The notes under the pieces were generated by a model. It was given only the letters and a program-made list of their open reading frames with translations. It made no database searches and had not been told where the DNA came from. This document shows, in pieces, positions 19,936-64,000 of a stretch of DNA of 64,000 bases (positions within the stretch are counted from its first letter, which is position 1; each line of letters begins with the position of its first letter). The stretch is taken from the IMG/VR virus record IMGVR_UViG_3300032331_003609, positions 124,001 through 188,000 of that record; one strand, 5' to 3'. The position numbers and the translations under genes are program-made.

Positions 19936-20292
19936 ATGGAGTATGTTAAAAACAAAGATCTAAAAAGAGCGATATTAGAATCAAAAGAGAATGGAAAATT
20001 AACCGCAGAAACGGTTAAAATGTTTACTTTAATAGTAAATGGTCTTTCAAAAACAAAATCCTATCGGGATATTGAAGATAAAGAAGATTGCATAGCATTT
20101 GGAATGGAGGATTTAATTAAATATTGGGACAGATTTGATCCAGCTAAATCCGATAATCCATTTGCATTTATTTCACAAATTGCCAAAAACGGAATGCAAA
20201 AAGGTTGGAAAAAAATACATTCAACCAGGTCTATAAAAACCATCCCCTTTTCTAGACTTACAAGGGATGATAATCAAAATTATAATGTCTAA
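19936..20292 (+). CDS. gp55: Late-transcription sigma factor, T4 gp55-like
   Basis: YVKNKDL...LIVNGLS...SY...EDCI..G.E.LIKY...FDP.KSDNPFAFISQIA.NG matches the gp55 pattern (YVNNKEL...LIAEGLS...NFD..K..NPHAYITQ). Confidence 0.85.
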   Translation: MEYVKNKDLKRAILESKENGKLTAETVKMFTLIVNGLSKTKSYRDIEDKEDCIAFGMEDLIKYWDRFDPAKSDNPFAFISQIAKNGMQKGWKKIHSTRSIKTIPFSRLTRDDNQNYNV

Positions 20293-46742: not shown

Positions 46743-46743
46743 T

Positions 46744-49661: not shown

Positions 49662-49678
49662 CTAAAACTTAATTGATC

Positions 49679-49686: not shown

Positions 49687-49696
49687 CTTGGCAAAT

Positions 49697-49726: not shown

Positions 49727-49749
49727 GTTTATTTTGTTTTAATTTATTG

Positions 49750-50331: not shown

Positions 50332-50349
50332 TTTTGAATTATTTATATC

Positions 50350-50357
50350 TATATATC
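50350..50357 (-). promoter_or_regulatory. Late promoter GATATATA
   Basis: 18 nt upstream of the 50331 ATG. Confidence 0.65.
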
Positions 50358-50376
50358 TTTTTGCGTGATCGCATTC

Positions 50377-50610: not shown

Positions 50611-50624
50611 CTTTTCTTTTTTTA

Positions 50625-51323
50625 TTATCCTAGTCCTAAAAGACTTAATATTCCAGTATTAGTACTACCTGTTCCGTCGGTCGATTTGGCTGATGTTTTA
50701 GCTGCAGTAGCTAAATCTTTTTCTGAGAATTTTCCGCCTCCAAATATACTTTTGAATGATGTTCCTTCCCCACAAACTATTCCCTCTAATTTAGTTTCTA
50801 GCATAGTTGCAAAAGCGGTAGAGTTTATATAGGTAGTTAATGCCTCTCTTGTTGAAGCTACAAAAGTACCTCCTAAACCAGATTCAAAATTAATGTTTAT
50901 TCCTAATCCTCTAGAAAGTATAAGTGAGATAGCTTTTTCTTCTATTGTTTCTGTTAATCCTAATGTTATTGCTTTTGTCCAATATTTACAAGATCCTGCC
51001 CCGAAATAACTACCAATGTGCATAAATGAGATATTTTCCACTATATTCTTTGCAAATTCACTCATAAACCCACCGTCGTTTGGTAATCCGAATTTGTCCA
51101 AAAGCCATCCAGCAGCATAGTTTTTTAGTCTATCTTCAAATCCACCCATTAATTTACCGCCTAGACCGCTAATTAAATCCCAAAGGCCTTCATTTATTTG
51201 ATCTACTGATTCACCTTTGTGCAGCATATCATTATAATGAGCTTCTAAACCTTCCACTATTCTGAAATATTCTTCGTCTGTTACATTAACCTTTGTAAAT
51301 TCTGAATATTTGATGACTTTCAT
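50625..51323 (-). CDS. Putative internal head / membrane-active protein (true start MKVIKYSEF at 51323)
   Basis: GATATATA 17 nt upstream of this ATG; amphipathic Gly-rich helices (GLWDLISGLGGKLMGG; GILSLLGLG). Confidence 0.75.
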   Translation of the reverse strand: MKVIKYSEFTKVNVTDEEYFRIVEGLEAHYNDMLHKGESVDQINEGLWDLISGLGGKLMGGFEDRLKNYAAGWLLDKFGLPNDGGFMSEFAKNIVENISFMHIGSYFGAGSCKYWTKAITLGLTETIEEKAISLILSRGLGININFESGLGGTFVASTREALTTYINSTAFATMLETKLEGIVCGEGTSFKSIFGGGKFSEKDLATAAKTSAKSTDGTGSTNTGILSLLGLG

Positions 51324-51340
51324 TTCTACTTTATTTTTAT

Positions 51341-51379
51341 TATATATCTCTTCTATAATAATAAAACCAAAGATATATA
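51341..51379. promoter_or_regulatory. Divergent pair of GATATATA late promoters (51341-51348 minus, 51372-51379 plus)
   Basis: Back-to-back exact motifs between divergent genes. Confidence 0.7.
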
Positions 51380-51400
51380 ACCATATAATCAAGTCACCCA

Positions 51401-51973
51401 TTGAAACACCTTCTAAGTTATAGAGATTTATTTGAAAGTACCTCTGCTGGATCCCAGGATAGGGGATCTTCAGATGTGCCTCCGTTCAAGTTTGCTATAA
51501 ACTTCGACCCTAGACTAGGATACACTAAAAACGATTTTGTGCAGGATTTGACTGAGATCTATTTGGGATATCCATTAAAGGACCGTAGAGATCTTATGGA
51601 TGCTGTTTTTAAAAGCGCTGGTGTTTTTAAAATATCAGACATTCAGGATCTTCCGCAGGACAGGGTAGATAAATTAATCAAAAGCGTAGAAGAGTATATG
51701 GAAAGTAAATCCGAGTATAAATTAGAAATACTTCCAGACGGGTTTATTCTTTGCTTTGAGGGGCTTAAACACCGAAAAAGAACTTGTGATGTTTATTACT
51801 CCCCGACGGAAAGAAAAGTAAAAATATCATATACCGACGCCTATCCAGAAAATGAAGAGATAATAATTGGGATAGATGGATTTTCTCCTATATCAGTAGG
51901 AGTTGATAATAACGATTTTATGGCGACGGTTGAAAAGTGCGATGATTATGCTAAAAAGTCTAATCCCTTATAG
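51401..51973 (+). CDS. Hypothetical protein with capsid-targeting-like N-terminus (TTG start)
   Basis: MKHLLSYRDLFE|S; late promoter 21 nt upstream. Confidence 0.7.
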   Translation: MKHLLSYRDLFESTSAGSQDRGSSDVPPFKFAINFDPRLGYTKNDFVQDLTEIYLGYPLKDRRDLMDAVFKSAGVFKISDIQDLPQDRVDKLIKSVEEYMESKSEYKLEILPDGFILCFEGLKHRKRTCDVYYSPTERKVKISYTDAYPENEEIIIGIDGFSPISVGVDNNDFMATVEKCDDYAKKSNPL

Positions 51974-52696
51974 CATAGAAAGATAATCCCTATAATTATT
52001 AACTATAAATTCTATTGACTTGTCTTTCATAACCTCAAATGATATTTCATCTTCGCCCTTGGCCTTTTGCAAATCCACAATAATAAAACAATCGGTATAC
52101 TTAGAAAAGTTTTTGATCTCCTTTTCAAAAAAGTTATAGATTTTTCTGTCAGACTTTGTATACTCGGGTAACGGGTCCATCAATTCGCTTAACAAAAGAC
52201 CTACCTGCTCAACCTCATCAACTTTAATAATAGAAAACAACCAAGAGTAAATTTTCATTTTCTTGTTCTTGTTATTTCTCATAACAACATATCCGCGGTC
52301 TTTAGAGAAAAAATCCTCATTGTGTATTCTGAACTCTAAAGATTTTTCTATTTCTTCGAGGTAGGGATTTAACTTCTCCATAAAATTGTCTAACACCTCT
52401 AATGTTCCGTCTAATATAAGTGGAACTTCTTCATTCTCGTCGACAAGTGTTATTAGTTCATGGGTTTTCTCTATTTCGTCCTGGGTCATATTTTTAACAG
52501 TCTTATCACTAAGTCTATTAAACTTTTGAAAACTTTTTACATCATTGTAAACCCTGGTTATTTTTTGGATTTGCTCTGAGTATTTTTTCTTGCCAAGATC
52601 AGTTTCCACAGATTGCAGAAAATCCATCAGAATATAATACTTATGCTCTGCATCTATAGGATCTTGTAAAAACCAATATGGTTGTAAATTTTTCAT
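51968..52696 (-). CDS. Conserved hypothetical protein
   Basis: 242 aa; WF...PID.EHK.YIL..FLQ N-terminal motif. Confidence 0.75.
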   Translation of the reverse strand: MKNLQPYWFLQDPIDAEHKYYILMDFLQSVETDLGKKKYSEQIQKITRVYNDVKSFQKFNRLSDKTVKNMTQDEIEKTHELITLVDENEEVPLILDGTLEVLDNFMEKLNPYLEEIEKSLEFRIHNEDFFSKDRGYVVMRNNKNKKMKIYSWLFSIIKVDEVEQVGLLLSELMDPLPEYTKSDRKIYNFFEKEIKNFSKYTDCFIIVDLQKAKGEDEISFEVMKDKSIEFIVNNYRDYLSML

Positions 52697-52767
52697 TGCT
52701 TACTACTATAATATATAACCCAAAACGTGACGGATTCCTCTCATAAAAAAAATATTTCTCGTTTTTG

Positions 52768-52796
52768 GAAACTTTCCACTAAAACACAACTAAGAT
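52768..52796 (+). promoter_or_regulatory. ECF-type promoter GAAACTT-N16-TAAGAT
   Basis: Upstream of the first glycosyltransferase gene. Confidence 0.45.
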
Positions 52797-52842
52797 TGTT
52801 ATCTATTAACATCCTGGGTTATGAATATATCTATAGTCTCTT

Positions 52843-53430
52843 ATGAGCCCCTTTCTAGTAATAGCTTATTATACCTTAGGAAACCCTTACCAGCAACTCT
52901 CGGAAAATCTTACAAAATCTTGTAAAGAATTTAATCTACCCCATTTTTTAAAACCAATAGAAGACTTAGGGTCTTGGGAAAAGAACACACACTATAAAGC
53001 AAACTTTATCAGTGACTGTTTAGAAAGATTCTCAGAAAATCTAGTTTATGTAGACGTTGATGCAGAGTTTAAAAGATATCCAGATCTATTTGAATCTTTA
53101 GATTGCGATATAGCATACAGGACAGAGAATTTTAGATGGAGACAGAACGAAGCTTTAAGTGGAACAATCTTTATAAGAAATAATGATAAGGTAAGATCCC
53201 TAGTTAATCTTTGGAAATCGATCAATGAATTAACCCCAGCTATCAGAAATAAGCCAGACACATGGGAACAGGCTAATCTGCAAAGGGCAACCCAACAGAG
53301 CCCCGAAATAATCTATGAAAATCTGCCGCCGGAATATACCTATATTTTTGATCATACAAAAACAATGTATCCTAGTATTTCTCCAGTGATAGAACACTTT
53401 CAAGCATCTAGAAAATCTCGATCAAATTAA
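52843..53430 (+). CDS. GT-A fold glycosyltransferase
   Basis: W..N..YK..FI...L, YVDVDA (DxD), LSG.IF, WEQ..LQ, I.HFQASR. Confidence 0.8.
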   Translation: MSPFLVIAYYTLGNPYQQLSENLTKSCKEFNLPHFLKPIEDLGSWEKNTHYKANFISDCLERFSENLVYVDVDAEFKRYPDLFESLDCDIAYRTENFRWRQNEALSGTIFIRNNDKVRSLVNLWKSINELTPAIRNKPDTWEQANLQRATQQSPEIIYENLPPEYTYIFDHTKTMYPSISPVIEHFQASRKSRSN

Positions 53431-53463
53431 CAATAATGAGGATTTTGGATCATAAACATGAAT

Positions 53464-53471
53464 GATATATA
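53464..53471 (+). promoter_or_regulatory. Late promoter GATATATA at the head of the glycosylation operon
   Basis: 18 nt before ATG 53490; downstream genes overlap or abut through 62530. Confidence 0.65.
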
Positions 53472-53489
53472 AAAAGCGTAACCCATAGA

Positions 53490-54620
53490 ATGTTATCAGG
53501 AAAAATAAGTAAGATACGAAAAATTTGGAATCCTATTAAGGATTTTATTAAACCCGAATTGGATATAAATGATACCCCGAAGAATCCGGGTGTTACCGGC
53601 AATACATCAAACGTTACTGTTAAACATAAGATCATCAGCTATTATGCTGATTATGAAGAAAGAAAATATTATAAGGGATTTGCCAAAGCACTTATAGAGA
53701 GGTGCAAAGGATTTGGCTTGGACTATGATATTGCAGAAATTGAATCCAGAGGAAACTATGGAGATAATTGTCTAATGAAGCCTGAGTTTATCCTTGAAAA
53801 ATTAAAGCAGTATAAAAAACCTCTAATATGGATGGATTGCGACACCGACTTTAGAGAGCCGTTTGATCATTTCAATGAGGTTACAGAGGATATAGGAATG
53901 GCAACTCATAGCGGGAATATTGAGGGAATCAAAGCATCCCCCTTATATTTAAATTACACTAAAGGTGCTTTTAGAATAATAAGAGAGTGGGTGATTCATT
54001 GTAGAGAATGTTATGATAATGGTATAGTCGAATTAGATCATGACGCATTAAAGCACTACGTACTAGATACAATTAAAGGATCATATTCGATATACATACT
54101 AAATAAAAATTGGAACGACTTTGTACATGGGCGTTATATTTGGAATGGGAACTCAAAAGTCGAAGGCAAGGTACAGACCCATAGACAGGTAGGTGTTACA
54201 GATGATGTAAGAAGATCCTACTCACAAAATGCTAAGACATTTAAAATTATATTCAAATCGGAGACACCAGAGGATTTTAAATCTGGGTTGATCTTCTTAG
54301 ATCAATTTTCAGATAGATCCAGAATTAATTTTATTTTTAAAAAGAAGCTTTTAGCCGAATCTATAGATAATGATGATTTTGCTAGACTTAAAATAGAATC
54401 TGGCGGATTGATATACTTTGATCCCTCCGTTCTTGATTCTATTGAACCAGGAAAATCCGATATTATTATAGAAGCTACAAACGTCACAAGCATAGAGCAA
54501 GATTGGGATCTTAAAATTATATCGAGTATAGACACGGAACAAAATCCACTTGATGATTTATTTTTTGATTCAAAAGAAGGGGGAGTTAGAATAAAAACAT
54601 ATAAAAAACTATGGAGCTAA
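53490..54620 (+). CDS. GT-A glycosyltransferase (paralog of 52843..53430) with degenerate C-terminal domain
   Basis: NCLMKPEFIL..L, WMDCD, ASPLY, DHDAL. Confidence 0.75.
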   Translation: MLSGKISKIRKIWNPIKDFIKPELDINDTPKNPGVTGNTSNVTVKHKIISYYADYEERKYYKGFAKALIERCKGFGLDYDIAEIESRGNYGDNCLMKPEFILEKLKQYKKPLIWMDCDTDFREPFDHFNEVTEDIGMATHSGNIEGIKASPLYLNYTKGAFRIIREWVIHCRECYDNGIVELDHDALKHYVLDTIKGSYSIYILNKNWNDFVHGRYIWNGNSKVEGKVQTHRQVGVTDDVRRSYSQNAKTFKIIFKSETPEDFKSGLIFLDQFSDRSRINFIFKKKLLAESIDNDDFARLKIESGGLIYFDPSVLDSIEPGKSDIIIEATNVTSIEQDWDLKIISSIDTEQNPLDDLFFDSKEGGVRIKTYKKLWS

Positions 54621-55471
54621 TAAAAGGCATAGGAATGCCATTTCCTGAGAATTATTCTTCATGCTCTAATCTGCCGCCAAAAGAATTTTGCTGGACTAGT
54701 AAGGAGGGTATAGCAGATATCTATATTGATGATAAAATAATGGACGGGTTACAAACTCCTAAGAGTAATTCTAAATTTGGATGGCTTTGTGAATCTAGAG
54801 AGATCGCTATAGATATTTTTAATACTATATTACAAAATCCTAAAAAATTCAAAGAAAAATATGCAGGTATTTTTACGTGTGATGAGACTTTATTAGGGTG
54901 TGATTCTTTATTCATATATGCACCACCAGGATCTAATCTTCCGTGGACCAAGCCTGAAGAAATATCAATTTATGAAAAAAGTAAACTATGCTCTATGTTA
55001 TGCTCGCCTAAGGCAAGAACAGAAGGGCATAAACTCAGACTAGAAGTAGCAAAGACCCTAATGAATAGATTGGATTTATTCGGAGGTGCCCATGGATCCC
55101 CTAGAATAGGTGAGGGATTTGGACCAAAGCAGGATTGGTGGAGATCTAAATTACCAGCTTTAAAAGATTACATGTTTTCAATTGTTTTCGAAAATGCTGT
55201 TTATGACAAGTATTACACTGAAAAAATAACAGACTGTTTTGCAACAGGGACAATTCCAGTTTATTGGGGAACTAAAAAAGTGGTAGAGGATTTTAATTCT
55301 GATGGAATTATATTTTATGATGAACTGGGTTCAATAGAAGATCTAAATGAAGAATTATATCTTTCTAAATCAGATTCAATCAAAGATAATTTAGAAAGAG
55401 TCAGATCATTAAAGTCTGGAGATGATTGTGTTTATTCTGCTATAAAAACAATTCAAAATGCAGAAAAATAA
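54611..55471 (+). CDS. GT10-like (fucosyltransferase-type) glycosyltransferase
   Basis: K...LKDYMFSIVFEN....YYTEKITDCF.TGTIPVYWG. Confidence 0.82.
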   Translation: MELIKGIGMPFPENYSSCSNLPPKEFCWTSKEGIADIYIDDKIMDGLQTPKSNSKFGWLCESREIAIDIFNTILQNPKKFKEKYAGIFTCDETLLGCDSLFIYAPPGSNLPWTKPEEISIYEKSKLCSMLCSPKARTEGHKLRLEVAKTLMNRLDLFGGAHGSPRIGEGFGPKQDWWRSKLPALKDYMFSIVFENAVYDKYYTEKITDCFATGTIPVYWGTKKVVEDFNSDGIIFYDELGSIEDLNEELYLSKSDSIKDNLERVRSLKSGDDCVYSAIKTIQNAEK

Positions 55472-56096
55472 AACTATCTTAGTAACCCAATTTTACATTC
55501 CCGATGACGTTAAAAGATATCAGGAATTAAAGTATTGTGTGAAAGAGAATATTTCCAATACACTAATAGATCAAATTGTTTTGGTTGTTGAAAGGGGAAC
55601 TTCTGATAGACTGATCCCATTCCACGAGAAAATAAAAATTAATTGGATAGAAAATAGGCCAACATACCAAGATCTTTTTAAGATAGCAAAAAAAACACTC
55701 GGAAACAAAAAAGGATTAATGGTAATATCTAATAGTGATATTTTTTATGATGAAGATTGTATTTCTAAAATGTATGAAAAAATTTCCAATCAAGAACCCC
55801 TAGCCCTTTCAAGATGGGAATTCAAAATAGGAAGCAACCCGGTTCATCATGATACTTGGGACAGTCAAGATACGTGGGTGTTTAAGGATTATATTCTTCC
55901 TGGAAAATATGCTATAAATTTAGGAATACCTGGATGTGATAACAAAATAGCTTACGAGCTTCAAAAGGCTGGATATATGGTTAAGAATCCATCTAAGTCT
56001 ATAAAATCCTATCATTATCACACATCAGAGCATAGAACATATAATGAAGAAGATAGAATTTCTGGACCTTATCTTTTTATAAACACTGAAGAATGA
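55458..56096 (+). CDS. Putative GT-A-like glycosyltransferase
   Basis: R.QEL..C...N, RPTY, ISNSDI, LSRWE, SQDTW.F, G.PGCDN.IA. Confidence 0.65.
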   Translation: MQKNKTILVTQFYIPDDVKRYQELKYCVKENISNTLIDQIVLVVERGTSDRLIPFHEKIKINWIENRPTYQDLFKIAKKTLGNKKGLMVISNSDIFYDEDCISKMYEKISNQEPLALSRWEFKIGSNPVHHDTWDSQDTWVFKDYILPGKYAINLGIPGCDNKIAYELQKAGYMVKNPSKSIKSYHYHTSEHRTYNEEDRISGPYLFINTEE

Positions 56097-56743
56097 GTAA
56101 AATAGATTTAAAAAAAATAACTGCGGTTTGTATAGACGGAAGACCCTATGATAAAGAAAGGTATGAGAGGTATAGTGTTATTCTTAATTTCTTTCTAACA
56201 AACGCGGAATTTACATCTATACAAATGATATCCACACACGATCCAGAAATAGAAGGTGTTTCTCATACAAGAATAAAAGAATTTGGAATATCTGATTATT
56301 CAAGATTCTGCTTGCATCATTTATCAGATTGGGTTAATTCTGAGTTTTGCCTTATTTTTCAGGATGATGGATTTATACTCAACCCTAGTTTATGGAACGA
56401 TTCTTTTTATGAGTATGATTATATAGGATCTCCTTGGCCTCTTTATATAGGTTGGCCGGTAGAGGGACAACAAGTAGGAAATGGTGGATTTTCACTCAGA
56501 AGTAAAAGGCTTTTAGAATTTACTAAAACATTTACCGGGCACACCACTGAGAATGAAGACACCTATATAATTTCTGCTAAAAGAAAAGATATAGAAGATG
56601 AAGGATTAAAAATTGCTCCTTTAGAAATTGCTCGACTTTTTTCGATTGAGAATAGTTTAGACCCCGAGCATCGTTTAGATACATGCTTTGGATTTCACGC
56701 CAAGCATTTATTAGATGATGCAATAAAAATGATACAACAATGA
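56093..56743 (+). CDS. Putative glycosyltransferase (DUF5672-like)
   Basis: LIFQDDGF, YDYIGSPW, VGNGGFSLRSK, ED, FS.E, FGFH. Confidence 0.75.
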   Translation: MSKIDLKKITAVCIDGRPYDKERYERYSVILNFFLTNAEFTSIQMISTHDPEIEGVSHTRIKEFGISDYSRFCLHHLSDWVNSEFCLIFQDDGFILNPSLWNDSFYEYDYIGSPWPLYIGWPVEGQQVGNGGFSLRSKRLLEFTKTFTGHTTENEDTYIISAKRKDIEDEGLKIAPLEIARLFSIENSLDPEHRLDTCFGFHAKHLLDDAIKMIQQ

Positions 56744-57468
56744 AAGTAATGGCATATTATCCAGTTCACTATGGAGCTGAGTATTTTAATGCATCTATTA
56801 AATCAATAGATGAACAGGTTGAGAAAATCCTAATTCTTTATACGCCTAAACCTAGTTATGGCCACGGAACAGAAAAGCAATGCCCGGAAACAGAAGATGA
56901 ATTAAAAGAGATAGCATTTGGATCTTCCAACAAAATAGAATGGGTGACAGTAGATGCTGGTAATGAAGGAAATCACCGGGCATTAGCATTTACCAATGCA
57001 TCTGAATATGATATCATGCTAACTCTAGATACCGATGAGGTTTGGGAGTCTACTTCTTTAGAAAGATGTATTCAAGAAGCATATGACGGAGAAGCATGGA
57101 GAAGAAATATTTCCGGATTTATTCATTTTTGGAAATCTTTCAATTGGGCATGTCAAGATGGTTTTGAGCCTGCTAGAATTTTTAATCTAAAAAGAAAAAA
57201 TAATTTAGAGGTTCCAATTAACGGTACAATCTATCATTTTGGGTATGCTCAATCTAAAAAAATAATGGATTACAAGTTTGATATTCACGGACACAAGAAT
57301 GAACTTAAAGAAGGATGGTTAGAAAATACATACTATGGATGGGAACCTGGAAAACTAGATCTTCATCCAACATGTGGGGTTTGGCCAGAAGCTAAACTGT
57401 TTGATAAAAACACACTCCCTGATATTTTAAAATCACATCCAAATTTTGATAAAGAAATAATTTCATGA
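56740..57468 (+). CDS. GT2-like glycosyltransferase
   Basis: LTLDTDEVW DxD motif; IYHFGY. Confidence 0.75.
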   Translation: MKVMAYYPVHYGAEYFNASIKSIDEQVEKILILYTPKPSYGHGTEKQCPETEDELKEIAFGSSNKIEWVTVDAGNEGNHRALAFTNASEYDIMLTLDTDEVWESTSLERCIQEAYDGEAWRRNISGFIHFWKSFNWACQDGFEPARIFNLKRKNNLEVPINGTIYHFGYAQSKKIMDYKFDIHGHKNELKEGWLENTYYGWEPGKLDLHPTCGVWPEAKLFDKNTLPDILKSHPNFDKEIIS

Positions 57469-58400
57469 GAAAAAAGCTTTTATACATTCCTTTAGATTAT
57501 TGTAGACATGCTGAGAGTGATTCAATATTTAACTCCATGTTATCTGGATTTAATACCCAATTTGAAGCTCGTGTTTTTAAAAATATGGAGGAATCTATTT
57601 TATTTAATCCGGACCTTGTTTATATGCACGGTAATGCCATTTCGATTGAAGAATGTCATTTGCTTAAAAAATCAACTAATGCTTTTTTTACCATATGGGT
57701 AGGTGACGTTAGATATGCACCTTTACCCGAGGCAATGAGCATGATTGATGTTGCAAATCTCTATTTATTTCCATTTAAAGGAGAACAATTAAAATCTTTT
57801 TCCCGAATCCTTAATACACCTTGTGAATATCTTTTTGAGGTATTTGATGATAGGCAGATTAGAGATGTAAAGGAGATATCTTCTGGAAGAATAGTATTTG
57901 TTGGCAATGTTTATGAGCATTTTCCAGGGGGTGAAGAAAGAATATCTCTCGTAAAATTTATTGGGAAACATGCTCCTGAATTAGAGTATTATGGATCATT
58001 CCCATATGAGAGTAATTCAGCAAAAGGGGGAATAGATTTCTCAAATGTTCCAGACTTATATAATTCATCATATTTAACTATTGCACATAATAATAGAAAT
58101 GATATAGATGGGTATTTTACTCACCGTAACTTAATAGCGCTAGCATCAGGCTCATGTGTATTGATGAAATATTTTCCTGGTATAGAGGAATTCTTTATTA
58201 ATTGGGAGCATTGCGTTTATTATAAAACAAATTATGAATTATTGGATGTAATTGAATTTTTAAAAAGAAACCCAGACATAAGAAATAAAATTGCTAAAAG
58301 CGGAAATACATATGTTAGGGAAAATTATCTAAATGCTAATTTTGCCTATAAGTATAATGAAATTTTAAATAAAATAAAAAAGCTAAATCATGAAAGATAA
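57465..58400 (+). CDS. GT-B glycosyltransferase (CgeB/DUF3880-like)
   Basis: W.GD.R, IVFVGN, ER, R....LASG, G.EE.F....H.VYY, IAK.G..YV. Confidence 0.78.
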   Translation: MRKKLLYIPLDYCRHAESDSIFNSMLSGFNTQFEARVFKNMEESILFNPDLVYMHGNAISIEECHLLKKSTNAFFTIWVGDVRYAPLPEAMSMIDVANLYLFPFKGEQLKSFSRILNTPCEYLFEVFDDRQIRDVKEISSGRIVFVGNVYEHFPGGEERISLVKFIGKHAPELEYYGSFPYESNSAKGGIDFSNVPDLYNSSYLTIAHNNRNDIDGYFTHRNLIALASGSCVLMKYFPGIEEFFINWEHCVYYKTNYELLDVIEFLKRNPDIRNKIAKSGNTYVRENYLNANFAYKYNEILNKIKKLNHER

Positions 58401-58917
58401 AATAAAAAAATATTCTCTCCATTGGGCTTTAGGTGGAAATGATGCGAACGGAGGACTGGAACAAAATGCTTATGAACTTGAAAAGCTTTGTGAATTTATA
58501 AAGGAAAAAAATATTAAAACCTACACAGAGATAGGGTGTGCTGCTGGACAGCTCCTAAGATTTATGAGGGATGAATTTGAACTTGATACAACGGGAATTA
58601 CTTTAGAACCAAGGGATACTCATAAAGATCTACCCATAATACACGGAAGTTCCAGAGATCCTGAAATAATAAAAACTGCAAAGCCGTGTGATCTTTATTT
58701 CATAGACGGAGATCATTCTTATTTAGGAGTTAAATCTGATTATTTGAATTATAAAGGTCTTTGTAAATACATGGCATTTCACGACATATTAGGGCAAAGA
58801 GACTGTGAAGGGGTTTCCCAATTTTGGAATGAAATAAGAAATGAATATGAATTTATAGAATTTATAGATCCTAATAGGGATATAGCTAGTGGAATCGGAA
58901 TTATTAAAATAATATAA
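58390..58917 (+). CDS. Class I SAM-dependent methyltransferase (Methyltransf_24-like)
   Basis: EIGC..G, FIDGDHSY.GVK.D, AFHDI, V..FW. Confidence 0.82.
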   Translation: MKDKIKKYSLHWALGGNDANGGLEQNAYELEKLCEFIKEKNIKTYTEIGCAAGQLLRFMRDEFELDTTGITLEPRDTHKDLPIIHGSSRDPEIIKTAKPCDLYFIDGDHSYLGVKSDYLNYKGLCKYMAFHDILGQRDCEGVSQFWNEIRNEYEFIEFIDPNRDIASGIGIIKII

Positions 58918-58919
58918 AA

Positions 58920-59954
58920 ATGGAAACTGTAATTATAACCGGATCCTGTGGATTAATTGGAAGTGAAGCTGTTAAATTCTTTCATACACAAGGATTTAAA
59001 ATAATTGGAATTGATGATGATTCTCGAGCTAAATTTTTTGGAAAAGAAGCAAGTACAAATGGGATGCTTTCTCAATTAAAAGAACTTAAAAATTACCAGC
59101 ATCTTTCAATTAATATTTCATCTTATCAAGATCTACAGACTAGTTTATCCAGCATTAAAGATTTAAAGATGATTATTCATACAGCTGCTCAACCTTCTCA
59201 TGATTGGGCAGCAACAAATCCGTTTGCAGATTTTAATGCAAATGCACTTGGTACCTTAAACATGCTAGAAATAACAAGAAATTATTTTCCAGAGGTAGTT
59301 TTTATCTTTACTTCTACTAATAAAGTTTATGGAGATTTACCTAATACTATAACAGAATACACAGAATCTAATTCTAGATTTAATCCGGTTAATTCTGATT
59401 TTATAGAAAAAGGAATTAACGAAAACCTATCAATAGATCAATGTAAGCATTCTTTATTTGGTGTATCAAAAGCTTACGGGGATTTAATAACACAGGAATA
59501 TGGAAAATACTTTGGATTAAAAACTGGCACATTCAGAGGTGGATGCTTAACTGGACAAAATCATTCAGGTGTTAAGGCTCATGGATTTTTATCTTATCTA
59601 GTAAAATGTGCAATGACAGGAGAAAAATATTACATTAATGGATACAAAGGAAAACAAGTTAGAGATAACATACACTCTAGTGATGTTGTCTCCGCCTTTT
59701 ATGAATTTTATAAAAATCCTAATCCCGGTGAAGTCTATAATATAGGAGGAGGAAATCTTTCAAACTGCTCAATTCTAGAAGCTATTGAATTAATTCATGA
59801 AATATCAGGTAAAAGAGTAGACTATGAATTACTTGAAACACCAAGAGAAGGCGACCATATTTGGTATATTAGTGATATGACAAAATTTAGAAATGATTAT
59901 CCAAATTGGATTCAAAAATATGACCTAAGAAAAATAATAAAAGAAATGATATGA
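58920..59954 (+). CDS. NAD-dependent sugar epimerase, CDP-paratose 2-epimerase (RfbE)-like
   Basis: ITGSCGLIG, HTAAQPSH, STNKVYGD, S.FGVSK, FR.GC.TG, GKQVRD..H. Confidence 0.88.
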   Translation: METVIITGSCGLIGSEAVKFFHTQGFKIIGIDDDSRAKFFGKEASTNGMLSQLKELKNYQHLSINISSYQDLQTSLSSIKDLKMIIHTAAQPSHDWAATNPFADFNANALGTLNMLEITRNYFPEVVFIFTSTNKVYGDLPNTITEYTESNSRFNPVNSDFIEKGINENLSIDQCKHSLFGVSKAYGDLITQEYGKYFGLKTGTFRGGCLTGQNHSGVKAHGFLSYLVKCAMTGEKYYINGYKGKQVRDNIHSSDVVSAFYEFYKNPNPGEVYNIGGGNLSNCSILEAIELIHEISGKRVDYELLETPREGDHIWYISDMTKFRNDYPNWIQKYDLRKIIKEMI

Positions 59955-60580
59955 TTAGTATAGTTTTTCCCCACGCTATGAACAAAGAGAATGATGCGGT
60001 TCTCCAATTGAAATTAAAAATGTTAGAAGAGAATTCCACTTACCCCTATGAGGTTATGGTTTTATCCAACACAGGAAGACCTGATTTAGTTTATGAATCA
60101 TGGGATTGGATGATGAGAAGAGCTAAATATGACCTGGTTCTATGGGATAATTCAGATATAACATATGCTCCAAAATTCATGGATAATATTATCAAACACA
60201 AAGATGATGCAGATTGGTTAGGACTCGAATTAATTGAATGTGGAGCCATAGGAGTGGCTGCAACCAACATCCATCAAGATTTTGGAAGAACAGCAAATTC
60301 TTTCAATAGATCAGAATTTGAAAAATGGGTGGAAGAATATTCTAAAGATCGCCCATCAATAAGAGAAGGATTTTGCTGGTACTCTCCTTCAGTTTGGAAG
60401 AAAGAATGGTACATTAAAATAGGTGGTTTTAACTTCTCAAAGCCATTTCCTCACCCGAATGATTCTGAGTTTAGAGAGAAGTGTATAGCAGCAGGATCAA
60501 CATTTGCTGTTGTTAATTCTTTTGCATATCATTTTCAAAGAGCAGGAGAAAATAGGGGAGAAAAACCAGAAAGAGAATAA
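59951..60580 (+). CDS. GT2-like glycosyltransferase
   Basis: ISIVFP, LWDNSD, GGF...P....DSEF, YHF. Confidence 0.65.
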   Translation: MISIVFPHAMNKENDAVLQLKLKMLEENSTYPYEVMVLSNTGRPDLVYESWDWMMRRAKYDLVLWDNSDITYAPKFMDNIIKHKDDADWLGLELIECGAIGVAATNIHQDFGRTANSFNRSEFEKWVEEYSKDRPSIREGFCWYSPSVWKKEWYIKIGGFNFSKPFPHPNDSEFREKCIAAGSTFAVVNSFAYHFQRAGENRGEKPERE

Positions 60581-60590
60581 TCAATGATAT

Positions 60591-61526
60591 ATGAAAAAAA
60601 ATATTGCAATATTTGGATCAACAGGATTAGTTGGTTCTAACATTCTTAAAAAAATAGACACCGAAAAATATAAGGTTTATGCTCCTTCGAGAAAGGAGCT
60701 AGATCTTTTCGATCAGGAAAAGGTCCTAGATTGGTTCTTTGAAAATAAAATGGAATATGTAATCATTGCAGCTGCTAGGGTTGGAGGAATAGTTGCTAAT
60801 TCAACATACCCTACAGAATTCTTGCATGAGAATCTCACAATCCAAAATAATATTATAATGTCTGCTTTAAAGAGCGATGTCAAAAATCTTATATTTCTAG
60901 GATCTTCTTGCATTTATCCGAGAGAATGCCCACAACCAATTAAGGAAGAATATCTACTAACTGGTCCTTTAGAGAAGACAAATAAATCCTATGCCTTGGC
61001 AAAGATTGCTGGTATTCAATTATGTGATTCGATCAAAGAACAATACGGAAATAATTACTATTCTTTAATGCCGTGTAATCTTTATGGTCCGGGTGATAAT
61101 TTTGATCTAGAAGCTTCCCATGTTATTCCGGGAATGATTAGAAAAATTGAAAGCGCTAGAGACAACAATCAACCAACGCTTAAACTACTCGGAACAGGAA
61201 GACCCCTTAGAGAATTTCTTTATGTGGAAGATCTAGCAGAAGCTGTAATATTCATGTTAGAAAACTATAACGGAAAAGATGGTTTAATTAACGTTGGAAG
61301 CGGTTCTGAAATCACGATAAAAGATCTAGCAAATATAATTTCACGTGTCATAGGATATAAAGGTGAAATTCTTTTTGATACTGAGGGATTAGACGGAACA
61401 CCCAGAAAGGTAATGGACAATTCTAAAATAGAATCGCTTGGATGGAAACCCCAAATGACATTAGAAACAGGAATAACCGAAACAGTAAAATGGTATTGGG
61501 ACAATAAGGATAAAATTAGAAAATGA
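60591..61526 (+). CDS. fcl: GDP-L-fucose synthase
   Basis: G..GLVGS, AAARVGGI.AN, LGSSCIYP, YALAK, MPCNLYGP.DNF, SHVIPG, REFL.VEDLA, DG.PRK. Confidence 0.96.
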   Translation: MKKNIAIFGSTGLVGSNILKKIDTEKYKVYAPSRKELDLFDQEKVLDWFFENKMEYVIIAAARVGGIVANSTYPTEFLHENLTIQNNIIMSALKSDVKNLIFLGSSCIYPRECPQPIKEEYLLTGPLEKTNKSYALAKIAGIQLCDSIKEQYGNNYYSLMPCNLYGPGDNFDLEASHVIPGMIRKIESARDNNQPTLKLLGTGRPLREFLYVEDLAEAVIFMLENYNGKDGLINVGSGSEITIKDLANIISRVIGYKGEILFDTEGLDGTPRKVMDNSKIESLGWKPQMTLETGITETVKWYWDNKDKIRK

Positions 61527-62530
61527 AAATAGCATTAATAACAGGAGTAAATGGACAGGATGGGTCATATTTAGCAGAGTTGCTTCTTGACAAGGGATAT
61601 ATGGTTCATGGAACAATTAGAAGGTCTTCTTCTTTTAACTCGGGAAGAATAGAACACTTTAGAGAGCATTCAAATTTCAAGAGACACTATATGGATCTAA
61701 CTGATCCAGGAAGTGTATCCCACGTAATTTCTGAATTAAAGCCTGACGAGATTTATAATTTAGCTGCTCAGAGCCATGTAAAAATTTCTTTTGAAATTCC
61801 AAACTATACCGGACAGGTAGATGCTATGGGTACATTAAATGTTCTGGAAGCAATTCGTGTTCATTCACCAAATTCTAAATTATACCAAGCATCAACCTCC
61901 GAGCTTTATGGAAAAGTTCAGGAAACACCTCAGACTGAAACGACCCCATTCTATCCAAGATCTCCATACGGAGTTGCAAAACTATATGGATATTGGATTG
62001 TTAAAAACTACAGGGAGTCTTATAATCTATTTGCATGTAACGGAATTCTTTTTAATCACACCTCTCCGAGAAGAGGTGAAAACTTTGTTGAGAAGAAAAT
62101 TATAGATTCCCTATGTCAAATTAAAAAAGGAAAGACAGATATACTAACTCTTGGAAATCTTTCTGCTAGAAGGGATATAGGACACGCAAAAGAATACGTT
62201 GAAGGTATGTGGAGAATGCTTCAATTAGAATCCCCCGAAGATTTCGTACTAGCAACAGGCAAGACTCACTCTATTAAAGAAATGGTTGATATGGTTTGTC
62301 AAAAATTAGATATTGATATAGATTGGAAGGGCGGGGGTGAAAGAGAAATTGCAATTGATAAATCCTCTGGAGGAATTATTATAGGAATAGATCCTAAGTA
62401 TTATAGACCAGCTGAAGTAGAGCTTTTACAAGGTGATTCAGCTAAAGCTAAAAAAGTATTAGGATGGGAACCAAAACTATCTCTGTCAGAAATATTTGAT
62501 GAGATGATAGCAGAATCACTAAAGGATTAG
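61523..62530 (+). CDS. gmd: GDP-mannose 4,6-dehydratase
   Basis: ALITG.NGQDGSYLAE.LL, YNLAAQSHV, QASTSELYG, PRSPYGVAK, NGILFNH.SPRRG, RD.GHA.EYV, RP.EV..L.GD. Confidence 0.97.
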   Translation: MKIALITGVNGQDGSYLAELLLDKGYMVHGTIRRSSSFNSGRIEHFREHSNFKRHYMDLTDPGSVSHVISELKPDEIYNLAAQSHVKISFEIPNYTGQVDAMGTLNVLEAIRVHSPNSKLYQASTSELYGKVQETPQTETTPFYPRSPYGVAKLYGYWIVKNYRESYNLFACNGILFNHTSPRRGENFVEKKIIDSLCQIKKGKTDILTLGNLSARRDIGHAKEYVEGMWRMLQLESPEDFVLATGKTHSIKEMVDMVCQKLDIDIDWKGGGEREIAIDKSSGGIIIGIDPKYYRPAEVELLQGDSAKAKKVLGWEPKLSLSEIFDEMIAESLKD

Positions 62531-62760
62531 TGATTAGTGTTTGATACGATTTCATTGGCTTTCAAAAGATCTTCTACTGTTTTAACTGTGTATATTGTTT
62601 GGCCAGGTACACCCCAGTCTTTTTGTTCACCCCAATTGATAAATCCTTGATGTGTGATATGGTTTCCTGAATTATAAGAAAAATCGTGATGTCCTTCTTT
62701 CGAAGACGCCTGTTCAAACTCATCCCTAGATGAAATATTTTTATATCCGTATTTTTCCAT
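62527..62760 (-). CDS. Small hypothetical protein
   Basis: 77-aa ORF; ATG overlaps the stop of the upstream minus-strand gene. Confidence 0.6.
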   Translation of the reverse strand: MEKYGYKNISSRDEFEQASSKEGHHDFSYNSGNHITHQGFINWGEQKDWGVPGQTIYTVKTVEDLLKANEIVSNTNH

Positions 62761-63338
62761 TATTTCTTTTTCTTTCTTAAGTTAGCTTTTGCCTGCTTGT
62801 AAAGTGCCTTATCTCCCATTTTAGATGTCTTACCCCCTGTAACAAACGAGTTAACCCTAGCCATTGCCCATTGTTGAGGATTAGTTCCTGGTATATGTCC
62901 TATTTTCCAAGCAGCATATCCTCTTTTCCACACTTTTTTTAAAATACCTAATGGGAATCTAGTTTTTTCGGATTTCTTTTTAAGTGCTTTATTTACTGGG
63001 CTAGAAACAGAATCTACACCCTCATTAAGATTGTCCAGGTTATGCTCCTCTTTTAGTTCATTAAAAACCTCCCAGGTTGCAATCTCTACTGCTTCATTGA
63101 ATCCTTCAAAACCTAATATTTTGCTGTTTTTATTTTCTCCAAACATTTTCTTGTATTTATTTGTGTATTGGCTAGTTTTTGTGCCAACTTTTTTACCTTT
63201 GCCTGCCTTTCCTGATTTATAATCTGCATCCCATTCAGTGTATGCTGAGGGATCATTATCAGCCTTATCCTTATTATCTTTAATCTCCCTTTTCATTATT
63301 CGGGGATTTTTGGTGAGATATTTCTTAGGTACTTTCAT
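62760..63338 (-). CDS. Basic virion-type protein with C-terminal domain resembling DUF5824-like proteins (true start MKVPKK at 63338)
   Basis: PLGILKKVWKRGYAAWKIGH.PG..PQQWAMARVNSF..GGKT; GATATATA 9 nt upstream. Confidence 0.7.
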   Translation of the reverse strand: MKVPKKYLTKNPRIMKREIKDNKDKADNDPSAYTEWDADYKSGKAGKGKKVGTKTSQYTNKYKKMFGENKNSKILGFEGFNEAVEIATWEVFNELKEEHNLDNLNEGVDSVSSPVNKALKKKSEKTRFPLGILKKVWKRGYAAWKIGHIPGTNPQQWAMARVNSFVTGGKTSKMGDKALYKQAKANLRKKKK

Positions 63339-63347
63339 AATTGTTTT

Positions 63348-63355
63348 TATATATC
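63348..63355 (-). promoter_or_regulatory. Late promoter GATATATA
   Basis: TATATATC on +, just upstream of the 63338 ATG. Confidence 0.6.
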
Positions 63356-63455
63356 CTGAAATAAATGCTTTTAATCTTCTATAATAAACTGGAAGAAAGA
63401 AAATAAAAGCCTTCATGGCCGCATGTTCAAAAAACTCAAGAAAATAATACAAATT

Positions 63456-64000
63456 ATGACAGATAAGGATATTTCCGAATTGAGGGAAGAATATTCCGTT
63501 TTTTCGTATCAGTGGATAAAAGGGGATAATATTTCACAAACCCAACATTTTGAAGATTTAATAGAGGAAGGTGGAAGAAAATACATCTTATTTTCGGATA
63601 AATCTAGAATAGCATTAGATCTATTAGATGAGTATATGATTAAGGTTGAAAGGGGGTTTGAAGAAATAATTCCAACATCCGATGTTAAGCTAGTATCCCA
63701 AACAGATCTTTCCCAAAACAAGGGGGTAAAAAAGAGGGATGCTCAGGAAATTAAAACCCAAGCCGTAGAAGGAAATCCTATTTTTGCTCTTTTATCAAAG
63801 CAAAAAGAAAACTGGGTAGATGTTGATCTAAAGCTCAGTATTAATCTGCCTCCTAGAAGTTTATGGGACGTTTTAATGGGTTCGTTTGATGAAGCGGAAA
63901 AGGATATTTTAGAGTACGTTACTAAAGACCTTGATATAGAGGTAGTCCGCCAATCTCTGAGGGAATCTATAAAGGATATATATAAAAAGCAAAAAACAAT
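63456..64000 (+). CDS. Hypothetical protein, 3'-truncated (absent from the ORF track)
   Basis: Manual translation MTDKDISELREEYSVFSYQWIKGDN...NPIFALLSKQK...LSINLPPRSLWDVL..., open to the window end; alternative ATG at 63423. Confidence 0.75.
   Translation, partial: MTDKDISELREEYSVFSYQWIKGDNISQTQHFEDLIEEGGRKYILFSDKSRIALDLLDEYMIKVERGFEEIIPTSDVKLVSQTDLSQNKGVKKRDAQEIKTQAVEGNPIFALLSKQKENWVDVDLKLSINLPPRSLWDVLMGSFDEAEKDILEYVTKDLDIEVVRQSLRESIKDIYKKQKT

What the first reader, a model, noticed from the sequence alone, without database searches (positions are those of the whole stretch)
52843..62530. Twelve-gene, late-expressed glycosylation island with its own GDP-fucose pathway
About eight glycosyltransferase-like genes of several folds, a methyltransferase, an RfbE-like epimerase, Fcl and Gmd form a near-gapless operon. 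There is no flippase, polymerase or membrane initiator, which argues against O-antigen conversion. A GATATATA promoter precedes 53490. This points to cytoplasmic assembly of a complex fucosylated, methylated glycan on virion proteins, as in giant viruses, possibly mimicking Bacteroidota fucosylated surfaces. DNA glycosylation is the alternative.
Basis: partly seen in the sequence, partly recalled or inferred. Interest (0 to 1): 0.7.

Follow-up and report, generated by a model that had tools for sequence, protein, structure and literature searches.

The report
Phage fucose-glycan assembly gene island
A freshwater jumbo phage carries a real 12-gene operon of soluble sugar-adding enzymes plus its own GDP-fucose pathway, probably switched on late to decorate virus particles, but similar untested clusters are already known in large cyanophages, so it is a good example rather than a new kind of system.

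Summary
Window 52843-62530 carries 12 co-directional ORFs that mostly overlap by a few bases. Eight are glycosyltransferase-like: O1, O2, O4, O5, O6 and O10 have or probably have the GT-A fold, O3 is a GT10 fucosyltransferase, and O7 is GT-B. The rest are a class I SAM methyltransferase (O8), a CDP-tyvelose-2-epimerase-like SDR (O9), Fcl and Gmd. None has a membrane segment.

GATATATA at 53464-53471 is a genome-wide promoter-like motif. It also precedes the portal, prohead protease, tail sheath and head-closure genes, and the phage encodes a T4 gp55-like late sigma factor.

The host genome is a 245-kb uncultured lake phage whose capsid protein is about 40% identical to that of Lak megaphages. 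In relatives the island keeps a core (O1-O3, usually Fcl and Gmd) around a swappable middle that carries other GTs, FkbM methyltransferases, a pyruvyl transferase and an acetyltransferase. Recombination patches have sharp edges.

The target of the glycan is not shown. Virion proteins are the best guess (about 0.45). Remodelling of host envelope glycan is about 0.25. DNA glycosylation is about 0.12, and it stays open because the genome has a cytosine-type thymidylate-synthase homologue.

Gmd-Fcl-fucosyltransferase operons already exist in cyanophages such as S-SKS1 and P-SSM2. I class this as a new member of a known kind.

The parts
52797..52830 (+). Conserved regulatory region upstream of O1: the palindrome TGTTATCTATTAACA (52797-52811) and a GAATATAT box (52823-52830)
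   Evidence: Nearly identical upstream of the O1 homologues in L002-L005, although the flanking sequence has diverged. Its function is inferred only.
52843..53430 (+). O1, 195 aa, small GT-A-like transferase (DVDAE motif), related to the O2 catalytic domain
   Evidence: BLASTP against O2, E 3e-6 up to the DXD motif. Conserved at 64-92% in L002-L008. No Pfam or PDB sequence hit.
53464..53471 (+). GATATATA promoter-like box, 18 nt before the O2 start codon
   Evidence: Genome-wide statistics. Conserved upstream of O2 in L002-L005 and L008. In L009 and L010 the same position carries TATAAATA, the T4 late consensus.
53490..54620 (+). O2, 376 aa: retaining-type GT-A catalytic domain (about residues 43-229, DXD motif WMDCDTD) plus a second alpha/beta domain (about residues 245-376); a conserved core gene
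   Evidence: AF2 model pLDDT 89. VIA-align Z 13.7 to PBCV-1 A64R, then the GT6 family. Two-domain Foldseek matches to Mimivirus R699, LH3 and GlyE. ESM Atlas neighbours carry Nucleotid_trans and GT34. 848 homologues found.
54611..55471 (+). O3, 286 aa, GT10-family fucosyltransferase; a conserved core gene
   Evidence: PF00852 at 36.8 bits, above the 23.9-bit cut-off. H. pylori alpha1,3-FucT 2nzw, E 1.4e-8. 34-42% identical to cyanophage genes annotated as GT10.
55458..56096 (+). O4, 212 aa, probable viral glycosyltransferase (weakest assignment)
   Evidence: ESM Atlas feature score 0.98 to viral clusters named 'putative glycosyltransferase'. No Pfam or PDB sequence hit.
56093..56743 (+). O5, 216 aa, DUF5672 protein with a GT-A fold
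   Evidence: PF18922 at 72 bits. AF2 model pLDDT 96. Foldseek matches to GT-A enzymes including CHSY3, B3GalT6, GT8, BoGT6a and PBCV-1 A64R, E 1e-6 to 1e-4.
56740..57468 (+). O6, 242 aa, GT2-like GT-A transferase (DTDE motif)
   Evidence: Homologues named 'glycosyltransferase involved in cell wall biosynthesis', two with PF00535. Weak own hits to GT2 and CHGN.
57465..58400 (+). O7, 311 aa, GT-B fold glycosyltransferase
   Evidence: PF13524 Glyco_trans_1_2 at 54.7 bits. Weak hit to PHROG beta-glucosyltransferase, E 0.0015.
58390..58917 (+). O8, 175 aa, class I SAM-dependent methyltransferase (Methyltransf_24 type); first gene of the O8-O9-O10 cassette
   Evidence: Own Pfam hit below the cut-off. 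Most homologues carry PF13578, and one is named class I SAM methyltransferase. 84% identical to its L012 counterpart.
58920..59954 (+). O9, 344 aa, extended SDR NDP-sugar epimerase of the CDP-tyvelose 2-epimerase type
   Evidence: PF01370 at 112 bits. PDB 1orr E 5e-35 and 9rl0 E 6e-34, both full length. 92% identical to its L012 counterpart.
59951..60580 (+). O10, 209 aa, small GT2-like GT-A transferase
   Evidence: ESM Atlas score 0.98 to viral clusters carrying PF00535, PF13712 and PF02709. Weak GT21 hit. 89% identical to its L012 counterpart.
60591..61526 (+). O11, 311 aa, GDP-L-fucose synthase (Fcl/WcaG)
   Evidence: NF047922 E 5e-124 over positions 2-307 of 308, at 414 bits, below the 500-bit cut-off. 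51% identical to S-SKS1 'GDP-L-fucose synthase'.
61523..62530 (+). O12, 335 aa, GDP-mannose 4,6-dehydratase (Gmd)
   Evidence: TIGR01472 at 495 bits, above the 415-bit cut-off. 63% identical to S-SKS1 Gmd. 58-63% identical to Gmd of Bacteroidota MAGs.
19936..20292 (+). 118-aa homologue of the T4 gp55 late sigma factor; the likely reader of the GATATATA boxes (inferred)
   Evidence: Search of the phage's own genome with T4 gp55: 37% identity over residues 9-113, E 3e-6. ORF confirmed.

Best explanation
The island is an autonomous glycan-assembly line that works in the cytoplasm. Gmd and Fcl convert host GDP-mannose to GDP-L-fucose. The O9 epimerase supplies a second, C2-epimerised NDP-sugar. 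Eight soluble transferases build a branched hetero-oligosaccharide: O1, O2, O4, O5, O6 and O10 (GT-A type), O3 (GT10 fucosyltransferase) and O7 (GT-B). O8 methylates it.

O2 to O12 are transcribed from a GATATATA box of the kind that drives the structural genes. That box is probably read by the phage's gp55-like late sigma factor.

The most likely acceptor is a virion protein, either on the capsid surface or in the Ser/Thr-rich collagen-like fibres. This would give particles a strain-variable fucosylated coat, as in chloroviruses, mimiviruses and some mycobacteriophages.

Shown here: the enzyme families, their solubility, the operon layout, the motif statistics, and the conserved core with a mosaic middle. 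Inferred: late timing, the order of the steps, and the acceptor.
For: - Enzyme identities.
- No TM-like segment in any island protein.
- The GATATATA motif is concentrated in intergenic DNA and oriented toward start codons.
- The motif precedes the portal, prohead protease, tail sheath (two copies), head-closure and fibre-like genes.
- The motif is conserved before O2 in relatives, and a TATAAATA box occupies the same place in L009 and L010.
- A gp55-like sigma factor is present.
- The island lies just downstream of the head module. In the distant relatives L009 and L010 it starts 3 kb from the capsid and protease genes.
- The O2 catalytic domain is structurally closest to the PBCV-1 capsid-glycan transferase A64R. 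Its two-domain matches are protein-glycosylating enzymes: R699, LH3 and GlyE.
- Relatives swap in GT2, GT11, GT17-like and GT92-like transferases, FkbM methyltransferases, a pyruvyl transferase and an acetyltransferase.
- Against a near-identical phage, recombination patches have sharp edges. This fits a surface-exposed glycan under diversifying selection.
- A fibre protein with long G-T-S and G-S-A repeats offers many hydroxyl acceptor sites.
Against: - No data show glycans on any virion protein.
- A shared fold does not identify the acceptor.
- The capsid protein has no Ser/Thr-rich tail of the kind glycosylated in mycobacteriophages.
- Linkage to the head genes could simply reflect conserved gene order.
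- Diversifying selection would also act on a DNA glycan or on a modified host surface.
- The analogous cyanophage clusters are usually read as host-surface modifiers (PMC12801897).
- Late timing rests on a motif, not on expression data. The lake metatranscriptome contigs that match the island are short and could be DNA carry-over.
Confidence: 0.45

Rival explanations
1. Host envelope remodelling. The soluble transferases act at the inner face of the membrane on the host's own undecaprenyl-phosphate-linked intermediates (O-antigen, capsule or the Bacteroidota general O-glycan). They add fucose and other residues, and the host's flippase and ligase then export the product. This changes the infected cell surface, for example to block superinfection or to stop progeny sticking to debris.
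For: - All non-initiating transferases of Und-P pathways are soluble or peripheral, so the lack of membrane genes does not exclude this.
- O6 homologues are named 'involved in cell wall biosynthesis'.
- The closest sequence-level analogues are the cyanomyovirus clusters read as cell-wall or LPS modifiers.
- Cassette variability resembles that of O-antigen and capsule loci.
Against: - A late-type promoter shared with structural genes leaves little time to export a new surface glycan before lysis.
- No Gtr-type, Wzx, Wzy or ligase genes were found anywhere in the 86%-complete record.
- This function has not been demonstrated for the cyanophage clusters either.
Confidence: 0.25
2. DNA hypermodification. 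The phage replaces cytosine with 5-hydroxymethylcytosine or a related base, and some or all island transferases attach a fucose-containing glycan to it to evade restriction.
For: - The genome encodes a divergent thymidylate-synthase homologue at G000:103166-103945. It matches phrog_160 at E 5e-27, and its best PDB hit is the CMP hydroxymethylase MilA.
- In alignment it has Asp at the E. coli N177 position, as T4 gp42 does, and it keeps C146 and D169.
- It sits next to an NT5C 5'-deoxynucleotidase and a non-specific nuclease.
- Known DNA-glycan systems combine a TS homologue, NDP-sugar genes and 2-3 transferases, and group transfer can occur late (PMC13326640).
- Both GT-A and GT-B enzymes can act on DNA.
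- O7 has a weak hit to a PHROG beta-glucosyltransferase family.
Against: - The TS homologue is 74 kb from the island, with no transferase beside it. In relative G001 the spacing is similar. Known pathways are clustered.
- No T4 beta-glucosyltransferase homologue is present.
- GT10 and GT11 fucosyltransferases extend oligosaccharides rather than modify bases.
- Eight or more transferases plus methyl, pyruvyl and acetyl decoration imply a glycan far larger than the mono- to trisaccharides known on DNA. By my own estimate, such a glycan on every cytosine would add more than half of the DNA's mass to a full capsid.
- The TS homologue could equally be a dCMP methylase, or could feed an unglycosylated base.
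Confidence: 0.12
3. The glycan is built on something else: a non-structural phage protein, a host cytoplasmic protein, or a soluble or lipid small-molecule acceptor.
For: Nothing in the sequence fixes the acceptor. The O2 accessory domain (residues 245-376) has no assigned partner.
Against: There is no precedent for a 12-gene variable cluster serving such a role in a phage. The position and the promoter tie it to virion genes.
Confidence: 0.1

Closest known systems
Gmd-Fcl-fucosyltransferase / 'LPS' or 'cell wall synthesis and modification' gene clusters of large cyanophages (S-SKS1, P-SSM2, S-SCSM1, S-SCSM2R, S-SSM7)
   Same: Both are phage-borne operons of about 10-13 small soluble genes. 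They share Gmd (59-63% identical), Fcl (51% in S-SKS1), a GT10 fucosyltransferase (26-42%), further GT1, GT2 and GT11 genes and NDP-sugar epimerases, and neither has membrane components. In both cases the target is untested.
   Different: The phage lineage and probable host phylum differ: a Lak-related jumbo phage, probably of Bacteroidota, against T4-like and S-SKS1-type cyanophages. Only Gmd, Fcl and GT10 are recognisably homologous. No wcaG RNA motif is present here. Here the operon carries the structural-gene promoter box and sits next to the head module.
Chlorovirus PBCV-1 capsid glycosylation machinery (GMD, GMER, A64R and other cytoplasmic transferases)
   Same: Both have virus-encoded GDP-fucose synthesis, soluble transferases, methylated sugars, and independence from membrane glycosylation pathways (own knowledge of the chlorovirus literature). 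The O2 catalytic domain's best structural match is A64R, Z 13.7, and O5 also matches it.
   Different: That is a eukaryotic virus, and sequence identity is only 11-14%. Attachment to the capsid protein is proven there and not here.
Mycobacteriophage virion glycosylation (Che8, Corndog, Myrna; Freeman et al. 2023, as summarised in PMC12619734)
   Same: Phage transferase operons near structural genes, with glycans on the capsid and tail tube that shield the particle.
   Different: Those glycans attach to C-terminal tails of the capsid and tail-tube subunits. No such tail is seen on this capsid protein. Those systems have no GDP-fucose pathway. The paper itself could not be read.
Phage DNA glycan hypermodification clusters (T4 alpha/beta-GT; RB69 and DLP3 arabinosyl-5hoC; RL38J1)
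   Same: A thymidylate-synthase homologue in the genome, phage-encoded NDP-sugar synthesis, and several transferases.
   Different: Those transferases cluster with the TS homologue and number 1-3. Here the TS homologue is 74 kb away, there are 8 transferases including a fucosyltransferase, and there is no beta-GT homologue.
'Moraphages', freshwater jumbo phages of predicted Bacteroidota hosts (PMC12619734)
   Same: Freshwater origin, genomes of 200-300 kb, kinship to Lak phages, and putative glycosyltransferases among the widely shared genes whose role was left open.
   Different: Membership could not be tested because their sequences are not in the tools. That paper does not describe the island, the GDP-fucose branch or the cassette structure.

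Membership tests
De novo GDP-L-fucose pathway (Gmd + Fcl) | GDP-mannose 4,6-dehydratase scoring above the equivalog cut-off | tested here: met
   TIGR01472 at 494.8 bits against a 415-bit cut-off, positions 1-340 of 342
De novo GDP-L-fucose pathway (Gmd + Fcl) | GDP-L-fucose synthase (3,5-epimerase/4-reductase) scoring above the equivalog cut-off | tested here: inconclusive
   NF047922 E 5e-124, full length, but 413.6 bits is below the 500-bit cut-off. 51% identical to the annotated S-SKS1 Fcl. Adjacent to and overlapping Gmd.
GT10 alpha-1,3/4-fucosyltransferases | C-terminal GDP-fucose-binding domain scoring above the Pfam gathering score | tested here: met
   PF00852 at 36.8 bits against 23.9. 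H. pylori FucT E 1.4e-8, residues 179-239.
GT10 alpha-1,3/4-fucosyltransferases | Fucosyl transfer from GDP-fucose to a defined glycan acceptor | not testable with these tools
   Needs an enzyme assay.
Virus-encoded virion glycosylation machinery (chlorovirus, mimivirus, mycobacteriophage type) | Soluble virus-encoded transferases and sugar-nucleotide enzymes, with no membrane pathway parts | tested here: met
Virus-encoded virion glycosylation machinery (chlorovirus, mimivirus, mycobacteriophage type) | Expression together with the structural (late) genes | tested here: inconclusive
   Shared GATATATA box, a gp55-like sigma factor, and TATAAATA in relatives. No time-resolved expression data.
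Virus-encoded virion glycosylation machinery (chlorovirus, mimivirus, mycobacteriophage type) | Glycan covalently attached to virion proteins | not testable with these tools
   Needs virions.
Wzx/Wzy-dependent O-antigen or capsule locus | Initiating phosphoglycosyl transferase, flippase and polymerase or ligase (multipass membrane proteins) | tested here: not met
   No TM-like segment in the island. The only multipass candidate in the record is an unrelated 499-aa protein at 7545-9044 with no Pfam or PHROG hit. The record is 86% complete.
Phage DNA sugar-hypermodification cluster | Pyrimidine-modifying thymidylate-synthase homologue (or 5mYOX) in the genome | tested here: met
   G000:103166-103945, phrog_160 E 5e-27, Asp at the N177 position
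Phage DNA sugar-hypermodification cluster | Transferases clustered with the base-modifying enzyme, or homologous to known DNA transferases | tested here: not met
   74 kb apart, with nuclease, nucleotidase and AAA/VWA genes as neighbours. No T4 beta-GT homologue. Alpha-GT was not searched.
Phage DNA sugar-hypermodification cluster | Glycosylated nucleosides in virion DNA | not testable with these tools
   Needs LC-MS or native-DNA sequencing.
Moraphage lineage (PMC12619734) | Clustering with the 25 described genomes in MCP, TerL and PolB trees | not testable with these tools
   Their sequences are not held.

The most novel reading that the evidence does not exclude
The phage replaces cytosine using its gp42-like thymidylate-synthase homologue, and the island then builds a strain-variable, fucosylated and methylated oligosaccharide on the DNA itself. 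That would be a far larger and chemically different DNA glycan than any known.
Probability: 0.1. Interest if true: 0.85.

Novelty: new member of a known kind. Interest (0 to 1): 0.5.

Why it matters
If the glycan coats the virion, this would extend protein glycosylation from giant eukaryotic viruses and a few actinophages to abundant freshwater jumbo phages. It would also show a serotype-like, cassette-swapping glycan coat on phage particles. That has consequences for host recognition, grazing and aggregation, and for how the long-unexplained 'LPS' clusters of cyanophages are read.

The island offers clean test material. It has a conserved core (O1, O2, GT10, Fcl, Gmd), a modular middle in which a methyltransferase, an epimerase and a transferase travel together, and a defined promoter.

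If the target is host surface or DNA instead, the island still matters as a defence or counter-defence device. The cytosine-type thymidylate-synthase homologue makes the DNA question directly testable.

Tried and rejected
- Megablast of the island against 50,697 phage records: no match.
- PDB sequence searches for O1, O2, O4, O6, O10 and O8: nothing meaningful.
- Pfam at E up to 10 for the unassigned ORFs: only marginal hits.
- NCBIfam and PHROGs: nothing for most transferases.
- Rfam over 46000-64000 at E up to 1: no match, so no wcaG RNA motif like the one annotated before the S-SCSM2R cluster.
- Sigma-70 and terminator scans: no better than shuffled sequence.
- Profile-profile comparison of the O6 family with the GT2-like and DUF5672 alignments: not significant with such shallow alignments.
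- Search for Ser/Thr-rich tails on the capsid protein and neighbouring proteins: none found.
- ThyX: absent.
- T4 beta-glucosyltransferase: no homologue.
- The thymidylate-synthase homologue was found in only 2 of 5 related, incomplete records. This gives no usable co-occurrence signal.
- The Freeman et al. paper on mycobacteriophage glycosylation is not held.
- Lake metatranscriptome contigs match a few 150-257-nt pieces of the island at 99% or more. They cannot prove transcription or timing.

Full report
**Context.** The window is bases 124001-188000 of a 244,850-bp IMG/VR virus record that is linear and about 86% complete. It is a tailed jumbo phage. The window carries two tandem portal paralogues, a prohead protease, a T4-type major capsid protein and collagen-like fibres. 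The capsid protein is 39-44% identical to those of Lak megaphages of Prevotella, and more distantly related to jumbo phages of Tenacibaculum, Chryseobacterium and enterobacteria. Near-identical DNA occurs in freshwater and lake metagenomes. The habitat, size and kinship match the 'moraphages', freshwater jumbo phages with predicted Bacteroidota hosts. That paper lists four putative glycosyltransferase groups among the widely shared genes and leaves their role open (PMC12619734). I could not test membership.

**The observation.** Twelve + strand ORFs fill 52843-62530. Ten of the eleven junctions are overlaps of 4-14 nt or gaps of 2-10 nt. Only O1 and O2 are separated by more, 59 nt.
- The right end is a complete de novo GDP-fucose branch. 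Gmd scores 495 bits against the equivalog cut-off of 415. Fcl aligns end to end at E 5e-124, although below its strict cut-off.
- O9 is an extended SDR whose nearest solved relatives are CDP-tyvelose 2-epimerases (E 5e-35, full length).
- O8 belongs to a family of class I SAM methyltransferases.
- O3 is a GT10 fucosyltransferase.
- O7 is a GT-B enzyme.
- O5, a DUF5672 protein, folds with pLDDT 96 into a GT-A transferase.
- O2 folds with pLDDT 89 into a GT-A domain plus a second alpha/beta domain.
- O1 is related to the O2 catalytic domain.
- O6 has homologues annotated as GT2-type.
- O4 and O10 rest on language-model neighbours only.

So 'about eight glycosyltransferase-like genes of several folds' is right, with O4 the weakest. 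None of the twelve proteins has a hydrophobic segment. The record holds no protein that looks like a flippase, polymerase or initiating transferase.

**The promoter.** GATATATA at 53464-53471 is not a chance match.
- It is the most enriched upstream 8-mer in the genome.
- 36 of its 46 copies touch the 6.3% of the genome that is intergenic, where base composition predicts 2.5.
- 28 copies point at a start codon within 40 nt, and one points away.
- It precedes the portal, prohead protease, tail sheath (twice), a head-closure protein and fibre-like genes.
- It is conserved before O2 in five relatives whose flanking sequence has diverged. In two more distant relatives the same position carries TATAAATA, the T4 late-promoter consensus.
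- The phage encodes a 118-aa homologue of the T4 late sigma factor gp55 at 19936-20292.

Late expression is therefore a reasonable inference but is not shown. O1 has its own conserved upstream region with a palindrome and a GAATATAT box, so it may be controlled separately.

**Comparative anatomy.** Thirteen related IMG/VR loci were recovered.
- In L002-L008 the island occupies the same slot. On the left are an AsnB-like amidotransferase, a RimK-type ligase and several unknown genes. On the right are three conserved small genes.
- O1, O2 and O3 are conserved throughout that set, and Fcl and Gmd wherever the contig reaches that far. O2 and O3 recur in every locus recovered. The middle is replaced by other cassettes: GT17-like, GT2, GT11 and GT92-like transferases, FkbM-type methyltransferases, a polysaccharide pyruvyl transferase, a hexapeptide acyltransferase and a tandem DUF5672 protein. 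All are soluble.
- O8-O9-O10 are 84-92% identical to the copy in L012, where O2, O3, O5 and O6 are only 49-63% identical. The methyltransferase, epimerase and transferase therefore move together as one cassette, plausibly adding one decorated residue.
- Against the near-identical phage L002 the flanks are 99-100% identical at the DNA level. Three sharply bounded patches drop to 82-94%: the O1/O2 junction, the O3/O4 junction, and Fcl-Gmd with the next gene. The island is a hot spot of allelic exchange.
- In the distant relatives L009 and L010 the island starts 3 kb from the capsid and protease genes.

**What it most likely does.** The chemistry is clear in outline. Host GDP-mannose is turned into GDP-fucose. 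A second sugar nucleotide is epimerised. A series of soluble transferases then builds a branched, fucosylated, methylated oligosaccharide in the cytoplasm.

The acceptor is the open question. I favour virion proteins (about 0.45) for these reasons:
- The promoter is shared with the structural genes.
- Linkage to the head module persists in two lineages.
- The conserved O2 catalytic domain is structurally nearest to PBCV-1 A64R, the chlorovirus capsid-glycan transferase (Z 13.7).
- O2's two-domain matches are enzymes that glycosylate proteins: Mimivirus R699 collagen glucosyltransferase, LH3 and GlyE.
- The variable, recombining cassettes fit an exposed structure.

A fibre protein at 13854-15941 has long G-T-S and G-S-A triplet repeats and is a speculative acceptor. 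The capsid protein shows no Ser/Thr-rich tail.

**Rivals.**
- Host-envelope remodelling (about 0.25) is not excluded by the missing membrane genes, because the later transferases of Und-P pathways are soluble and the host could do the rest. It is also the usual reading of the analogous cyanophage clusters. A late promoter argues against it.
- DNA glycosylation (about 0.12) gains from a finding outside the window. A thymidylate-synthase homologue at G000:103166-103945 has the catalytic Cys and has Asp where E. coli ThyA has N177, as in T4 dCMP hydroxymethylase. It lies beside a 5'-deoxynucleotidase and a nuclease. Recent work shows poly-glycosylated cytosines made by a TS homologue plus sugar-nucleotide genes and two or three transferases (PMC13326640). 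Against this rival: the 74-kb separation, when known pathways are clustered; the absence of a beta-GT homologue; the oligosaccharide-extending nature of fucosyltransferases; and the sheer number of transferases and decorating enzymes.
- A non-virion acceptor takes the remaining 0.1 or so.

**Comparison with what is known.** Phages with their own GDP-fucose pathway and a fucosyltransferase are already in the databases. Gmd is present in 89 phage records, mostly large cyanomyoviruses. Synechococcus phage S-SKS1 has a Gmd-Fcl-unknowns-fucosyltransferase operon of similar size. S-SCSM2R has a GT10, GT11, GT1 and GT2 plus epimerase cluster. Only Gmd, Fcl and GT10 are recognisably homologous to the island. 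The function of those clusters is untested.

I therefore class the island as a new member of a known kind: virus-borne, membrane-independent glycan-assembly clusters. What it adds is the lineage and probable host phylum, the structural-gene promoter, the core-plus-cassette architecture with documented recombination, and the co-resident cytosine-type TS homologue.

**Verdict.** Interest is moderate (0.5). It is a clean, testable system that bears on a long-standing unknown, namely what phage 'LPS' clusters do, but it is not unprecedented and its target is unresolved.

Noticed in passing
G000:C1:103166-103945 (outside the window; L015:1090-1869): Divergent thymidylate-synthase homologue with Asp at the E. 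coli N177 position (as in T4 dCMP hydroxymethylase) and D169 retained. It lies next to an NT5C 5'-deoxynucleotidase and a non-specific nuclease. This suggests the phage DNA may carry a modified cytosine.
   Followed up: partly
window 21351-22943 and 22947-24680: Two tandem full-length portal-protein paralogues (both phrog_213, E 6e-65 and 5e-59), the first preceded by a GATATATA box. Two portal genes in a row are unusual.
   Followed up: no
window 19936-20292: 118-aa homologue of the T4 late sigma factor gp55 (37% identity, E 3e-6), just upstream of the portal genes.
   Followed up: partly
window 46744-48177 and 48174-49661: An AsnB-like glutamine amidotransferase and a RimK-family glutamate ligase fused to a retropepsin-like / Zn_protease domain. 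Both are conserved at the left flank of the island in all close relatives. The ligase gene has a GATATATA box. Their target is unknown; they could act on a protein or a sugar acid.
   Followed up: no
window 13854-15941: 695-aa fibre protein with three blocks of collagen-like G-T-S / G-S-A triplets, very rich in Ser and Thr, which raises local GC to 0.43. A possible O-glycan acceptor, but this is speculative.
   Followed up: partly
window 52797-52830: Conserved palindrome TGTTATCTATTAACA and a GAATATAT box in the divergent intergenic region before O1, kept in relatives. Possibly an operator with a variant promoter.
   Followed up: partly
window 7545-9044: 499-aa protein with about five hydrophobic segments and an acidic C-terminus, preceded by a GATATATA box, with no Pfam or PHROG hit. 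It is the only multipass membrane candidate in the record.
   Followed up: partly
window 49750-50331: 193-aa protein that is extremely rich in Asp and Glu. It has a GATATATA box, and only its N-terminus is conserved among relatives.
   Followed up: no
window 62760-63452 (- strand): DUF5824 protein (51 bits) whose C-terminus matches the end of a PHROG 'cytidyltransferase' family. It is conserved at the right flank of the island. Any link to sugar activation was not examined.
   Followed up: no
G000:C1:24312-35651 (outside the window): A run of about ten consecutive genes whose products each start with a single hydrophobic helix, suggesting secreted or membrane-anchored proteins. Two are preceded by GATATATA boxes.
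   Followed up: no
G000:C1:45122-45826 (L034:3122-3826): A further small GT2-like ORF (234 aa, Pfam E 0.007) far from the island. A possible extra transferase.
   Followed up: no
L010:8894-10999 and L009:2683-4788: In two distant relatives the O2 homologue is a 701-aa protein with an extra N-terminal half of about 330 aa that has no Pfam hit. It may be an acceptor-binding module.
   Followed up: no
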